From: Phallusia mammillata
Lineage: Eukaryota
Length of the DNA: 64,000 nucleotides
Assembly: GCA_965637545.1 (NCBI GenBank)
Contig: OZ281500.1
Span: 20,708,001 to 20,772,000, forward strand
Reading direction: 5' to 3'
The translations under genes were made by a program, and so were the position numbers. Positions 7,321-18,711 of this stretch are shown piece by piece. Within the stretch, counting starts at the first letter, position 1; each line of letters begins with the position of its first letter. Under the pieces are notes generated by a model. The model saw only the letters and a program-made list of their open reading frames with translations, ran no database searches and was not told the DNA's origin.

Positions 7321-14919
<7,599 letters not shown>

Positions 14920-15369
14920 AATCCTACACCAACATGTTTACCCTATCGGTGCTTTCTGATGACACCAATCCCCTTAGCAGTGTAATGGTGACCACCAACA
15001 AACTGTAGTTAAATTTTAAATGACCAAGAACAGCAATTGTTTGCAGACAGCTTATATATATATAAGTATATGTACAACAGCAGTAATACAGTTGTTATCT
15101 TATGACATGCCCTTAAATGTATTTTAGAGTCGTACTATTTAGTTCTGTTTAAATGCACTGACTTGAACGTTGAGCTGGTTGTTGTGCCTTTTGCATGTCA
15201 AATGTTTATAAATGTAAAATAGTTCACCAGATACATATTATATCTGTGGCTGTGGGTATTTTTTGTTTACTTGTAATTGCCTTGTAGGTATTTATCTAGA
15301 ATTTGCTTATTCCATATAATTGCAACTTGTATTTGCTTGCATAATTCCAGAGTCATTAAAGTGCTGTCA

Positions 15370-15375
15370 AATAAA
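15370..15375 (+). promoter_or_regulatory. Probable PAPSS polyadenylation signal
   Basis: AATAAA about 450 nt after the PAPSS stop, following a T/GT-rich 3' UTR. Confidence 0.55.
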
Positions 15376-15412
15376 AACATTTTTCTCCACTTGGAGACAA
15401 TACGATGATATA

Positions 15413-17118
15413 CTAGTAGGAACAGTTTTCACAGTCAGGGGGAATAAAATCATAGTCTTTACATGGTGGCACAGTGCCCATAACAGTTACTCTATGTAGC
15501 ACCCTTAGCCCAGCATCTGCCACACTTGGAGGAATGGGCCCAGCCTGGTGACCAACTGCAAGATTATCAGATATAATGAAGTCACCTTCCTTCATCCATT
15601 TGTGGGAATATACCAAGGCATGATCAGTTATTGCAGTTTCAATCTCTTTGAGAATTGCAGCAGTTTCCTTAGAGATGCAAAAAGTAATGATACTGTTAGA
15701 AACAATTGTGCATGTCTAAACATAAAATGTTCAAGCACAAATAGCACTTAAATGCTACAAAAACTGTTATGTGAGGTGGTCATTTACATGTATTGATGAA
15801 AAAATTGCTAAATTATACCAGACCAGTGTTCTCAACCTTTAGGGTTTGCAGCATACTGAACAAATAACTTAAATTTGTTTCCTGTACCCTTTGAAAGCTG
15901 AAAAACATACAAAGCTATCTTTGGTAGCAAATGATTGAAATAAGTGTCAGACATTCTCATGCACGTCCACATTTCGTTAATAAACCCTTAAACATGAAAT
16001 GAGAGTAACAGAATTAAGAATCACTGCAATGGATACATAATCATTTTAAAAGCAGCACCATGGTGTGTTTAACAAAATTACATCGTCACCAACCTCTGGG
16101 CCGGTTGGTTCAAAATCTTTAATATCCTTGCTTCTGTCAAAGTCATAGACAAATGCTGTTGTCATACCAAGGTGCATACATAGAGTGGGTTTCCCAGTTT
16201 TAGGATGTTTGTAAATTAAAGGATGCACAATGTGTCCCCTACGATCGCTAACCATTGAAAGCCTTTCCCATTTACTTCTGGTTTCAGGTGAAAGTCTTCA
16301 AAAAAATACAAAACTAAAATACAAGCAGTGTACATTAACAAACTGAGCGTTTTCTGAAAGGTTCTTACTTTGAAATAATCTCTGTTAAAGGGATGAACAT
16401 TGTATCTCCACCTTGTTTTGGGACTTCCAACATGTGGTATATGGAATAGGCATATGGGCAAGATCTAAATGTCCCATCAATATGCCAACCTGACATCCCA
16501 ACTCCAGTACAACCTGCAAAAAAATACTGTCATAAAAAATTATCAAATAATCCCTAGTAAAATGCTGAAAGTCCATAAACAACAGTATATTGAGCTGAAA
16601 CAAGTCTCCGACTTAAAAATACAAAAAGATAGTAAGAAACAACTTTTGTACCCTTCTCTGGATCATTTGATACACAAAATATATCAACACATGGTGATGC
16701 TGGGTGCTTATAGAATGTAGTGTTGTCTATTTCACCAAAGTATTTGCTGATCTCAACATGCTTTGAACCACTGACTTTTCCCTGAAGAATAAGGCAGGTA
16801 CGTTATTTCCAAACACTACAATAACATTTTCTTTAAACATCATACTTTTTTTTCAGTTGTATTTATAATTTTTTTGTTTTTCTTGTTATGAATGGGTTTA
16901 AATAAGCTTTGCCAAATTACACATACATTTACTGCTACAATAAATCTAATAACTTCTTAACAAGGACTAACCTGATTACGAAAAACAACAAGCCTGTGTT
17001 TTGTTACATCCTTCTTTATTTGCTGAATAACTGCCTGCTCCAACGGTTGATTAAGGTTTAATCCAAAAACCTCTAAACCAATAGGCAGCACCTTTGATGT
17101 GTAAAATTTAGTGGCCAT
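15413..17118 (-). CDS. TauD/TfdA-family Fe(II)/2-oxoglutarate-dependent dioxygenase, ~292 aa
   Basis: Exons 17118-16972, 16781-16652, 16513-16369, 16295-16094, 15667-15413 join in frame. N-terminal PIGLEVFGLNL..HRLVVFRNQ, HxD motif GWHIDGTF, GGDTMF, HPLIYKHPKTGKPTL, KWMKEGDFIISDNLAVGH (distal His) and LHRVT (2OG-binding Arg). Confidence 0.9.
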
Positions 17119-18711
17119 CAGACACACACGTCTGATTTTTTACCACAAAAATACATATAGTTAAATATATATTAAACCAAATCATTTAAGCATACGGTCA
17201 AGTCAAGTCACAATTTTATTAGCATTTTCACTTTATCCAATTGTCATTGATGAATATAGTTGGCTAAATGATGATCAATCAAAAGTACACGGAAATTATG
17301 TGAAAAGTTTGGTGTCGTGTCGTGCAACAACCGACCCAATCAAAAAGGGAGTATCCCCTGTTTGGTTTGTCCGAAATAAAAACAATACACATGTATAAAT
17401 TTTTTATTATTTATTTAGTAAAACCGTTTGTAAGTTCTGAAATACAAAGTTCTAATTTACTATATAATTTTGCACAACAATTCATCTCATTTAGGACTTT
17501 TTTCGGCGATCAAGATTACGAAAAACGGAACACTGCCTGACGTCCTGGTTGGACAAACGGACATGGCTTATGCGTCGAACCAACCATACTGTTTACCTAC
17601 CGACTTCTTCTGTGAACGCTGGTTCAATCTATTGAAATCTTAATACAGTAATTCGTATTTCAATATCTCCCCGTATATCCGATACTGCTAGATATCTTCT
17701 CGATACCATTAGACATGCACCCCCTTTTATAAGCATAGCCACAAACGTCTTTTCATTTTTCTTTTTTTTTGAAAAACTTGAAAATTGGTCTATAAACTGT
17801 AAATACATACACTCAATGGCTGCAAGTTTGTTGCACTTTATTCTGCCTTTACCGTGGGCGTTTTCTTAAATGTAAATTGCAAGCCTGATTTGTGCATTCT
17901 GTAGTTATTCGTGAAACCGTAAACGAAATTTTTATTGTAAACTCAATGCCACACAAAAACCAGGGCAATAGCAAAAAAAGCTTTCTGGGTTTCCCGCAGT
18001 CGACGAAACAAGGCTTGGCACAAAACAAGACAGGTGACAGTGCTTAAAGGTTTGAGATACTACATTAAAGTGACGGTTATTTGGTGGTGCCAAAACTTTG
18101 GTTCTTCATGAAAGGCACTCGACAGGTCTAAGACCAGCGTTTGTTTTTGCGGAACAAGTTACGTTTCAACACAAAAACTAAACAAACTCAACACCAATTC
18201 AACACATCTACAGAAAACTAACAAACACAAGAATGCTTACGTTAAGGGATTTGAAGGTATTAGGGGCGGCCAACAATCAAACATAGCATAGCTTCATGTT
18301 TAGGAAGAAATCAAATCATTACGGGTGCATCTGTGTGCAACCAGCATGTTGCGTTGCATAGCATTGCATCAACTCATAATCTCTGCTCTAGCCCATTCCA
18401 AATTCCGACACACAACCACTGTGGCCAAAAAGGGGTACAGAAGTATCAGGCATACACACAGGCACATACATATAGGATTTGTGCCACTGCCCAGTTGATG
18501 CAAGCGACCGTTACATTAAAAATACAAATGTTTTAATATCCGGTAACAAACAGAACACCAAGCAAAAACGGGTCTATATATCCCGTCAGACACGCAATGG
18601 TTCGGACAAGAAAGCTAAAGAACTGTTAGACCATGTCCAAAGTGTCCAATTAAAGAAGGTTGTAGTTTTTTTGTTTGTTTTTTTGATAGTGCACAAAGCT
18701 GAAATACGGAT

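What the first reader, a model, noticed from the sequence alone, without database searches (positions are those of the whole stretch)
15413..17118. Intron-containing, bacterial-style TauD dioxygenase in an animal genome
Seen: a compact ~292-aa protein with a complete HxD..H iron triad and the C-terminal HR motif, starting directly with the TauD-like N-terminal strand, split by four coding introns. Established: the familiar animal members (BBOX1, TMLHE) are longer and have an extra N-terminal domain, and tunicates have a known bacterial gene acquisition (cellulose synthase). Inference: a domesticated horizontal transfer or a patchily retained ancient gene of unknown substrate (taurine, alkyl sulfate or a secondary metabolite).
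Basis: partly seen in the sequence, partly recalled or inferred. Interest (0 to 1): 0.7.

Follow-up and report, generated by a model that had tools for sequence, protein, structure and literature searches.

The report
Sea-squirt copy of widespread animal dioxygenase
The gene is real, spliced and expressed, but it is the sea-squirt copy of a small iron/2-oxoglutarate dioxygenase found in animals from sponges to lampreys and in green algae, not a bacterial gene newly captured by tunicates, and its substrate is still unknown.

Summary
Observation confirmed. A minus-strand gene at 15413-17118 has five exons and four GT-AG introns. It encodes a 292-aa single-domain TauD/TfdA-type Fe(II)/2-oxoglutarate dioxygenase with H103-x-D105, H248, R263 and H266-R267. 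Transcript-like contigs from four studies carry all four splice joints.

The tunicate-specific horizontal-transfer reading is not supported. The closest full-length relatives (50-63% identity) are Ciona and Clavelina orthologs, then proteins of amphioxus, echinoderms, hemichordates, lamprey, hagfish, molluscs, arthropods, a nemertean, a priapulid, a sponge and green algae. Solved bacterial enzymes are only 21-26% identical. Curated bacterial models score far below their cut-offs. Two scans of 185,579 prokaryote genomes found no close relative.

Three intron positions are shared by sponge, nemertean, brittle star, acorn worm, amphioxus and lamprey, and two of them by Chlorella. The family is therefore old and intron-bearing in eukaryotes.

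A Ciona "taurine dioxygenase" present in many animal groups was published in 2012 (PMC3494510), so the core finding is already known.

Two points seem new. Three ascidians share four introns, none at an ancestral position. The tunicate clade replaces three near-invariant residues next to the iron ligands: R99, E249 and Q255.

No other finding of this scan covers this gene.

The parts
16972..17131 (-). Exon 1. ATG at 17118-17116; coding part 17118-16972 (49 codons, phase 0 at its end). A probable 13-nt 5'UTR runs from a spliced-leader acceptor AG at 17133-17132.
   Evidence: Sequence and model. Joint 16971/16780 is present in RNA-like contigs of four runs. One contig (run X6) continues past 17137 with TTCTATTTG in mRNA sense, which is part of the Ciona spliced leader (tables 7-8; leader sequence in PMC1488885).
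16782..16971 (-). Intron 1, 190 nt, GT..AG, phase 0, 26% GC.
   Evidence: Ciona and Clavelina have an intron at the same position.
16652..16781 (-). Exon 2, 130 nt. It carries the family-invariant H75 (YKHP).
16514..16651 (-). Intron 2, 138 nt, GT..AG, phase 1.
16369..16513 (-). Exon 3, 145 nt. It carries M99 (16496-16494, where the wider clade has Arg), the iron ligands H103 (16484-16482) and D105 (16478-16476), and T130.
   Evidence: Pfam TauD 28.0 bits against a cut-off of 27, profile positions 97-131. Alignment of the WHxD motif with solved RdpA-type enzymes. Column counts.
16296..16368 (-). Intron 3, 73 nt, GT..AG, phase 2.
16094..16295 (-). Exon 4, 202 nt. This is the variable middle region of the protein.
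   Evidence: The donor at 16093 is used in all four laid runs. The in-frame GT at 16081 is not used.
15668..16093 (-). Intron 4, 426 nt, GT..AG, phase 0.
   Evidence: Ciona, Clavelina and the related ascidian contig L010 have an intron at the same position.
15413..15667 (-). Exon 5 coding part, with stop TAG at 15415-15413. It carries the iron ligand H248 (15550-15548), Q249, R263 (15505-15503, the likely 2OG-binding Arg), H266-R267 (15496-15491) and the tunicate-specific C-terminal ...NCSY.
   Evidence: Pfam TauD profile positions 214-267. Alignment with solved TauD/TfdA-type enzymes over DN..H...R..HR. dN/dS of 0.085 against the related ascidian contig L010 over exons 4-5.

Best explanation
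This is an ordinary, expressed host gene of the ascidian. Earlier notes of this scan name the genome Phallusia mammillata. The gene encodes a 292-aa, single-domain, probably cytosolic Fe(II)/2-oxoglutarate-dependent dioxygenase of the TauD/TfdA superfamily.

It is the ortholog of Ciona 'alpha-ketoglutarate-dependent sulfate ester dioxygenase-like' and of a Clavelina gene. It belongs to a conserved eukaryotic subfamily found in animals from sponges to jawless vertebrates and in green algae. Within animals the subfamily is inherited vertically. Tunicates evolved it faster and exchanged all ancestral introns for four new ones.

Mechanism, inferred from the family and not assayed: H103, D105 and H248 hold Fe(II). 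2-Oxoglutarate chelates the iron and is anchored by R263. Its oxidative decarboxylation gives an Fe(IV)=O species that hydroxylates a C-H bond of a small substrate. The substrate's anionic group (sulfonate, sulfate ester or carboxylate) would be held by R267, which corresponds to TauD Arg270, and probably by H75. If the substrate is a sulfonate or sulfate ester, the hydroxylated product collapses to an aldehyde plus sulfite or sulfate.

The substrate is unknown. The residue that positions the amine of taurine in E. coli TauD (Asn95, four residues before the first iron His) is Arg in the wider clade and Met/Ile/Thr in tunicates. Taurine is therefore only one candidate, and the tunicate enzyme may differ in substrate from other animals' orthologs.
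For: Gene model and splice sites. Spliced contigs from four runs of four studies carry all four joints.

Family: colinear Pfam TauD matches in exons 1, 3 and 5. The full-length Clavelina and Ciona orthologs score 110 and 91 bits against a cut-off of 27.

Relatives: 50-55% identity over the full length to proteins of Amphiura, Branchiostoma, Darwinula, Lineus, Lytechinus, Petromyzon, Ptychodera, molluscs, insects, crustaceans, Priapulus, the sponge Dysidea, and the green algae Trebouxia, Myrmecia and Chlorella. Identity is 58% to Ciona and 63% to Clavelina.

Tree: the careful ML tree gives the tunicate clade 100/100 support, nested in the core of animal and green-algal sequences.

Introns: three positions are identical in sponge, nemertean, brittle star, acorn worm, amphioxus and lamprey. 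Two of them are also in Chlorella.

Conservation: 48 of 62 columns that are at least 95% conserved in the clade are kept in all five tunicate-clade sequences, including H103, D105, H248, R263, H266 and R267. dN/dS is 0.085 against a related ascidian.

Fold: the AlphaFold model of the Clavelina ortholog has pLDDT 93.4 and matches TauD, AtsK, RdpA/AAD-1 and PlaO1 at TM 0.71-0.76.

Context: the gene lies between a PAPS synthase terminal exon and other animal genes. It is a single copy in the window.

Prior publication: PMC3494510 lists one Ciona taurine dioxygenase that is also present in hemichordates, sea urchins, hydrozoans, lancelets, nematodes, placozoans, aphids and annelids.
Against: No enzyme of this eukaryotic subfamily has been assayed, so the substrate and even catalytic competence are inferred.

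The backbone of the protein tree is unresolved. AU tests reject neither tunicates+cyclostomes (p 0.187) nor tunicates+green algae (p 0.358). Vertical descent of the tunicate copy in particular therefore rests on parsimony and distribution, not on a resolved tree.

Tunicates share none of the ancestral intron positions. They change three clade-conserved residues, R99, E249 and Q255.

The runs laid are labelled RNA only by a guess. The spliced contigs are the evidence for transcription.

The spliced Phallusia protein itself could not be handed to the family and structure tools, because it has no reference. Those tests used its exon pieces or its orthologs.
Confidence: 0.85

Rival explanations
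1. The tunicate copy replaced the ancestral gene in the tunicate stem lineage. It would be either a retroposed, intronless copy of the animal gene or an intron-poor copy taken from another eukaryote such as a green alga. It then gained four new introns and changed its substrate pocket.
For: Phallusia, Ciona and Clavelina share four intron positions, and none coincides with the three positions conserved from sponge to lamprey. The stem of the tunicate clade is long, at 0.59. The near-invariant R99, E249 and Q255 are replaced, and there are three one-residue insertions. The AU test does not reject tunicates+chlorophytes (p 0.358, delta lnL 2.4). Picoeukaryote algal copies are intronless. The Glyco_transf_21 neighbour seen in sponge and amphioxus is not seen next to the tunicate genes.
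Against: Fast protein evolution, intron turnover and scrambled gene order are general features of tunicate genomes (my own knowledge). They could give the same picture without any replacement. Tunicates+cyclostomes is not rejected either (p 0.187). Of three columns that separate animals from green algae, tunicates side with animals in two. In the ML tree the tunicates have no specific affinity to the intronless picoeukaryote group.
Confidence: 0.12
2. Recent or tunicate-specific horizontal transfer of a bacterial TauD/AtsK-type gene, later domesticated by intron gain.
For: The protein has a compact single-domain architecture like the bacterial enzymes and lacks the BBOX-type N-terminal domain. 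Tunicates do hold one accepted bacterial acquisition, cellulose synthase (PMC6523144, listed).
Against: The nearest relatives are eukaryotic at 50-63% identity. Solved bacterial enzymes are 21-26% identical. The bacterial taurine dioxygenase, ScoE and PtlD equivalog models score 48-80 bits against cut-offs of 313-550. Two scans of one genome per 185,579 prokaryote species found no relative with the clade's motifs. None of the 129 significant hits to exon 5 among 1.84 billion representative proteins could be traced to a bacterium: every one that I looked up was eukaryotic or an unnamed transcript-length contig. Orthologs exist in at least ten animal phyla.
Confidence: 0.02
3. Assembly contamination, or a decaying non-functional relic.
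For: None specific.
Against: The gene has canonical spliceosomal introns and a base composition like its surroundings. It is flanked by animal genes on the same contig. The same convergent PAPSS-TauD pair occurs in a related ascidian contig. The reading frame is intact, dN/dS is 0.085, and spliced transcripts are present.
Confidence: 0.01

Closest known systems
Ciona intestinalis 'alpha-ketoglutarate-dependent sulfate ester dioxygenase-like' (P0284). This is probably, though I did not check it, the 'Taurine dioxygenase' of Ni et al. 2012 (PMC3494510), which that paper places on chr 2q as the single Ciona copy. Also the Clavelina lepadiformis ortholog (P0272).
   Same: 58% and 63% identity. The four intron positions and phases are identical. 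Both share the tunicate signature residues and the C-terminal C-x-Y.
   Different: Different species. The neighbouring genes differ between the three ascidians.
Animal and green-algal TauD-like subfamily. NCBI names its members variously 'taurine dioxygenase-like', 'alkylsulfatase-like', 'ScoE-like' and 'RDPA-like'. Examples: Branchiostoma P0156, Amphiura P0141, Petromyzon P0198, Dysidea P0274, Chlorella P0287.
   Same: 50-55% identity over the full length. Same length and single-domain plan. 48 of 62 clade-conserved residues are kept, including all catalytic ones.
   Different: None of the three ancestral introns is kept. R99, E249 and Q255 are replaced. There are three single-residue insertions and a different C-terminus.
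Cnidarian aboral/apical-organ TauD genes (Clytia, corals, Nematostella; Sci Adv 2025, PMC12225738).
   Same: Non-BBOX, non-TMLHE TauD-domain genes of animals with no demonstrated substrate. Taurine catabolism is hypothesised for them.
   Different: I did not test orthology to the gene here. Expression in sensory or apical larval cells is known only for the cnidarians.
E. coli TauD (taurine/2OG dioxygenase; PDB 1OS7, 1GY9).
   Same: Same fold (TM about 0.75). Same H-x-D...H triad and the R-x-x-x-R pair matching Arg266/Arg270 (residue roles from PMC9304159).
   Different: 21-22% identity. The NCBIfam taurine dioxygenase model scores 57 bits against a cut-off of 313. The position of Asn95, which places the amine of taurine, is Met here and Arg in the wider clade.
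Pseudomonas AtsK (alkyl sulfate ester dioxygenase) and RdpA/SdpA/AAD-1/TfdA (phenoxyalkanoate dioxygenases).
   Same: Equally good sequence-profile and fold matches: E 1e-15 to 1e-18 and TM 0.71-0.75. Each uses an Arg to bind an anionic substrate group.
   Different: 21-25% identity. There is no evidence of a shared substrate.
BBOX1 and TMLHE, the TauD-domain enzymes familiar from vertebrates.
   Same: Same Pfam superfamily.
   Different: They carry an extra GBBH-like N-terminal domain, seen in the amphioxus neighbour gene. That domain is absent here, and they form a different subfamily.

Membership tests
TauD/TfdA superfamily of Fe(II)/2OG dioxygenases (Pfam PF02668) | Profile match above the Pfam gathering score | tested here: met
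   The exon 3 piece alone scores 28.0 bits against 27. Exons 1 and 5 match colinearly. The Clavelina and Ciona orthologs score 110 and 91 bits. The spliced protein itself could not be submitted, because it has no reference.
TauD/TfdA superfamily of Fe(II)/2OG dioxygenases (Pfam PF02668) | H-x-D...H facial triad for iron | tested here: met
   H103, D105 and H248 are present. They are invariant in a 54-sequence alignment and align with the WHxD and DN..H motifs of solved enzymes.
TauD/TfdA superfamily of Fe(II)/2OG dioxygenases (Pfam PF02668) | C-terminal Arg that binds 2OG, with a second Arg four residues later | tested here: met
   R263 and R267 in GLRVLHRV align with R..HR of a solved TauD (3SWT). 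Both are invariant.
TauD/TfdA superfamily of Fe(II)/2OG dioxygenases (Pfam PF02668) | Double-stranded beta-helix fold of the TauD type | tested here: met
   Tested on the Clavelina ortholog (63% identical). pLDDT is 93.4, and TM is 0.71-0.76 to TauD, AtsK, RdpA and PlaO1.
TauD/TfdA superfamily of Fe(II)/2OG dioxygenases (Pfam PF02668) | 2OG-dependent oxygenase activity | not testable with these tools
   Needs purified protein.
Taurine dioxygenase proper (bacterial TauD, NCBIfam NF007104 equivalog) | Score above the equivalog cut-off | tested here: not met
   56-57 bits against a cut-off of 313, for the tunicate and amphioxus orthologs.
Taurine dioxygenase proper (bacterial TauD, NCBIfam NF007104 equivalog) | Taurine-amine binding Asn, four residues before the first iron His (Asn95) | tested here: not met
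   Met99 in Phallusia, Met/Ile/Thr in other tunicate-clade sequences, and Arg in 52 of 55 other clade members. The role of Asn95 is taken from PMC9304159. The correspondence rests on ungapped spacing in the motif.
Conserved animal and green-algal TauD-like subfamily | High full-length identity to members from many phyla, and placement inside the clade in an ML tree | tested here: met
   50-55% identity to members of at least ten phyla. Nested in the 60-row core clade.
Conserved animal and green-algal TauD-like subfamily | Ancestral intron positions (alignment columns 166 phase 1, 213 phase 0, 275 phase 0) | tested here: not met
   Phallusia, Ciona and Clavelina have introns at columns 85, 128, 176 and 250 instead.
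Conserved animal and green-algal TauD-like subfamily | Near-invariant residues of the clade | tested here: inconclusive
   48 of 62 are kept in all tunicate-clade rows. R99, E249 and Q255 are replaced in all of them.
BBOX1/TMLHE subfamily | GBBH-like N-terminal domain ahead of the TauD domain | tested here: not met
   The Pfam match starts at residue 12 of 292. No other domain is found.
Tunicate genes acquired from bacteria (the CesA type) | Nearest relatives are prokaryotic and the gene is absent from other animals | tested here: not met
   The nearest relatives are animals and green algae. No close prokaryote relative was found.

The most novel reading that the evidence does not exclude
In the tunicate stem the ancestral, intron-bearing gene was replaced by an intronless copy, either a retrocopy or a copy from an intron-poor eukaryote. 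That copy then gained four new introns, and its substrate pocket was re-tuned: R99 to Met/Ile/Thr at the position of TauD Asn95, E249 to Gln/Met/Arg next to the second iron His, and Q255 lost. Tunicates would then use this old animal enzyme on a different substrate from other animals.
Probability: 0.15. Interest if true: 0.5.

Novelty: already known. Interest (0 to 1): 0.27.

Why it matters
As a case of horizontal transfer into tunicates it does not hold, and the presence of this gene in Ciona and many other animals was published in 2012.

What remains of interest is modest. The family is strongly conserved, at 55-67% identity between phyla, and reaches from sponges to lampreys and hagfish, yet humans lack it and no member has been assayed. 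A biochemical assignment would fill a gap in animal sulfonate, sulfate-ester or related metabolism.

The ascidian copies give a natural contrast, because three pocket-adjacent residues are changed. They are also a clean small example of complete intron-position turnover against a deeply conserved background.

Tried and rejected
1. My first gene model used the in-frame donor at 16081 and gave 296 aa. I rejected it because all spliced contigs use the donor at 16093, giving 292 aa.

2. The spliced protein has no reference, so I did not paste it into any tool. Pfam, PDB and the large HMMER search used exon pieces. NCBIfam, full-length Pfam and structure prediction used the Clavelina, Ciona and amphioxus orthologs. 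In scripts I used the spliced protein built from the window.

3. A scan of prokaryote genomes with a clade alignment, and a second scan with the divergent environmental protein P0095, both found nothing. The nearest bacterial relative therefore remains unidentified. This is a limited negative, because the method needs shared peptide motifs.

4. AU tests for tunicates+cyclostomes and for tunicates+chlorophytes were both non-significant. The protein tree cannot place the tunicate clade within the core.

5. Cluster look-ups of the distant hits returned unnamed transcript-length contigs, so the outgroup rows are of unknown taxon.

6. The PDB alignment meant to test whether H75 corresponds to TauD His70 did not print the TauD row. 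That correspondence stays an inference from spacing.

7. The adjacency to PAPS synthase is tempting, since both touch sulfur metabolism. It is not conserved in Ciona or Clavelina, so I do not use it as functional evidence.

Full report
**1. What is there**

On the minus strand between 17118 and 15413 lies a five-exon gene. The exons are 17118-16972, 16781-16652, 16513-16369, 16295-16094 and 15667-15413. The four introns are 190, 138, 73 and 426 nt long and all are GT..AG. They are much more AT-rich than the CDS: 26-32% GC against 41%.

My first model used an in-frame GT at 16081. Contigs of four public runs from four different studies all carry the same four joints, and in every one the fourth intron starts at 16093.

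The runs are labelled RNA only by a guess. Even so, intron-less contigs that join the exons exactly at canonical splice sites are what spliced mRNA gives. The two best DNA holders keep 78-88% of the stretch's words, introns included. The spliced holders keep about 40%, which is the exon share.

One contig (run X6) runs past 17137 with nine letters that read TTCTATTTG in mRNA sense, and it has one mismatch in its last aligned piece. Together with AATAAG this gives the Ciona spliced leader ATTCTATTTGAATAAG (PMC1488885) minus its first base. The genome reads AATCAG there. The mRNA is therefore probably trans-spliced at the AG at 17133-17132, 13 nt upstream of the ATG. I noticed this in passing and could not lay reads a second time.

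**2. What it encodes**

Pfam TauD (PF02668) matches exon 1 (profile positions 7-45), exon 3 (97-131; 28.0 bits against a cut-off of 27) and exon 5 (214-267), in colinear order.

The protein has:
- H103-I-D105 within GWHIDG;
- H248 within DNLAVGHQA;
- R263 and H266-R267 within GLRVLHRVTV.

These align with the WHxD, DN..H and R..HR motifs of solved TauD/TfdA-type enzymes. There is no N-terminal extension and no second domain.

The spliced protein has no reference, so the full-length tests used orthologs:
- Clavelina and Ciona orthologs score 110 and 91 bits on Pfam TauD.
- An AlphaFold model of the Clavelina ortholog (63% identical) has pLDDT 93.4 and pTM 0.91.
- That model matches a Burkholderia putative TauD, AAD-1/RdpA, PlaO1, E. 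coli TauD and AtsK about equally well, at TM 0.71-0.76 and 21-26% identity.
- A profile of the clade finds the same enzymes in the PDB at E 1e-18 to 1e-10.
- The curated bacterial equivalog models for taurine dioxygenase, ScoE and PtlD score 48-80 bits against cut-offs of 313-550.

The protein is thus a member of the superfamily but not of any characterised bacterial family.

**3. Where it belongs**

An exhaustive HMMER search with exon 5 against 1.84 billion representative proteins gave 129 hits. The full-length ones I could name were Saccoglossus, Solemya, Lingula, Acartia and Priapulus, plus protist transcripts.

Word searches started from the Saccoglossus protein, and then from an alignment of the window's exon pieces with the amphioxus protein. 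They returned hundreds of proteins of 265-350 aa from these groups:
- hemichordates, echinoderms, amphioxus, lamprey and hagfish;
- many insects, crustaceans and a scorpion;
- gastropods, bivalves and cephalopods;
- a nemertean, a priapulid and the sponge Dysidea;
- the green algae Trebouxia, Myrmecia, Chlorella and Micractinium;
- the tunicates Ciona and Clavelina.

The spliced Phallusia protein is 50-55% identical over its full length to the non-tunicate proteins. It is 58% identical to Ciona and 63% to Clavelina. Unnamed marine contigs that carry close relatives lie next to MCM8, importin and RING-finger genes, so they are picoeukaryote genomes.

Two scans of one genome per 185,579 prokaryote species found no relative.

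In a careful ML tree (LG+C20 PMSF, 67 rows) the three ascidians and two marine transcript sequences form a clade with 100/100 support and a long stem of 0.59. That clade lies inside an unresolved core of animal and green-algal sequences.

AU tests reject neither tunicates+cyclostomes (p 0.187) nor tunicates+chlorophytes (p 0.358). The tree places the gene in the eukaryotic clade but cannot say where in it.

**4. Introns**

I mapped exact exon structures from the genomic loci of nine orthologs.

Three positions (alignment columns 166 phase 1, 213 phase 0 and 275 phase 0) are identical in the sponge Dysidea, the nemertean Lineus, the brittle star Amphiura, the acorn worm Ptychodera, amphioxus and lamprey. 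Chlorella shares two of them (166 and 275). The gene was therefore intron-bearing in the animal ancestor. Its link with green algae involves an intron-containing eukaryotic gene, whichever way that link arose.

Phallusia, Ciona and Clavelina share four other positions (columns 85 phase 0, 128 phase 1, 176 phase 2 and 250 phase 0) and none of the ancestral ones. A contig of a related ascidian (L010) keeps the fourth intron position and the convergent PAPS synthase neighbour. Over exons 4-5 its dN/dS against Phallusia is 0.085, which shows strong purifying selection.

**5. Tunicate-specific changes**

Sixty-two columns are at least 95% conserved in the 48 named animal and green-algal core sequences. 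Of these, 48 are unchanged in all five tunicate-clade sequences, including every catalytic residue.

All five nevertheless replace three residues (counted over all 55 non-tunicate core rows):
- R99, which is Arg in 52 of 55 other sequences and Met/Ile/Thr in tunicates;
- E249, which is Glu in 49 of 55 and Gln/Met/Arg in tunicates;
- Q255, which is Gln in 55 of 55 and Pro/Ser/Lys in tunicates.

They also carry three one-residue insertions and a C-terminal Tyr.

R99 lies four residues before the first iron His. That is the place of Asn95 in E. coli TauD, which positions the amine of taurine (PMC9304159). E249 directly follows the second iron His. This suggests, but does not show, a change of substrate pocket in tunicates.

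**6. Prior knowledge**

Ni et al. 2012 (PMC3494510) list one Ciona 'taurine dioxygenase' (chr 2q) among 'algae-related' genes. Their supplement records it in hemichordates, sea urchins, hydrozoans, lancelets, nematodes, placozoans, aphids and annelids. They proposed an ancient transfer between algae and the ancestral animal.

A 2025 paper (PMC12225738) describes non-BBOX TauD genes in the aboral cells of cnidarian larvae. It states that the substrate is undetermined and that humans have only BBOX1 and TMLHE.

A 2026 survey of horizontally transferred tunicate genes (PMC13390645) mentions no taurine or TauD-type dioxygenase. I found no paper on the tunicate gene's function.

**7. Verdict**

The most likely mechanism is the family's standard one. 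Fe(II) is held by H103, D105 and H248. 2OG is anchored by R263. A ferryl intermediate hydroxylates a carbon next to an anionic group that is held by R267 and probably H75. A sulfonate or sulfate ester substrate is plausible but unproven.

The complete exchange of introns and the three pocket-adjacent substitutions in tunicates are the only new points. They leave room for a replacement-and-retuning scenario, to which I give about 15%.

The gene's neighbours here are a convergent PAPS synthase (last exon ending at 14919) and 4E-BP. They are not conserved in Ciona or Clavelina, so I do not read a sulfur-metabolism cluster into them.

Noticed in passing
window 17131-17137 (minus strand): Probable spliced-leader trans-splicing. 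One transcript contig continues upstream of 17137 with TTCTATTTG, part of the Ciona spliced leader ATTCTATTTGAATAAG, and has one mismatch where the genome reads AATCAG. The acceptor AG would be at 17133-17132, leaving a 13-nt 5'UTR.
   Followed up: partly
window 14773-15415: The last exon of PAPS synthase (C-terminal end of the ATP-sulfurylase domain, + strand, stop at 14917-14919) converges on the dioxygenase gene (stop at 15413-15415). Transcript contigs bridge the 493-nt gap, so the 3'UTRs abut or overlap. The same convergent pair is present in a related ascidian contig (L010).
   Followed up: partly
window 16081-16093: A second in-frame GT donor lies 12 nt downstream of the one used. Using it would add VGDD to the protein. 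None of the four laid runs uses it.
   Followed up: yes
L013:1-1799 (sponge Dysidea) and L001:30734-35326 (amphioxus): In both the sponge and amphioxus, the gene next to the TauD-like gene encodes a Glyco_transf_21 protein (PF13506, ceramide glucosyltransferase-like). This may be very old microsynteny. It is not seen next to the tunicate genes.
   Followed up: no
L014 (Chlorella sorokiniana), alignment columns 166 and 275: The green alga shares two exact intron positions and phases with animals, from sponge to lamprey. This bears on the 2012 claim of gene transfer between algae and the ancestral animal: whatever happened involved an intron-containing eukaryotic gene.
   Followed up: partly
L001/L002 (Branchiostoma lanceolatum) and the Saccoglossus contig of 640,732 bases: The family is tandemly expanded in amphioxus, where further 303-aa copies lie beside an 826-aa GBBH_N+TauD gene. 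In Saccoglossus at least five paralogs sit on one contig. The ascidians show a single copy.
   Followed up: no
C-termini of orthologs (alignment): The amphioxus, acorn worm and nemertean proteins end in ...QEL...KDEL-like DEL, and ...EEL. All tunicate-clade proteins end in [ND]C[SAC]Y. The meaning is unknown.
   Followed up: no
window 16710, 15361, 15168: Transcript contigs differ from the window at three sites. The A>G at 16710 changes codon Y73 from TAT to TAC and is synonymous. The other two lie in the 3'UTR. These are probably allelic.
   Followed up: partly
P0125 (Acartia fossae transcriptome): This 'copepod' sequence groups with marine picoeukaryote sequences (the P0199 group) on a long branch. 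It may be algal contamination of the transcriptome.
   Followed up: no
L015-L017 (JGI sample 3300018840): Marine environmental contigs of about 2.2 kb carry an uninterrupted 290-aa ORF with every tunicate signature, including a C-terminal DNCAY. They are probably mRNA of a planktonic or larval tunicate.
   Followed up: partly
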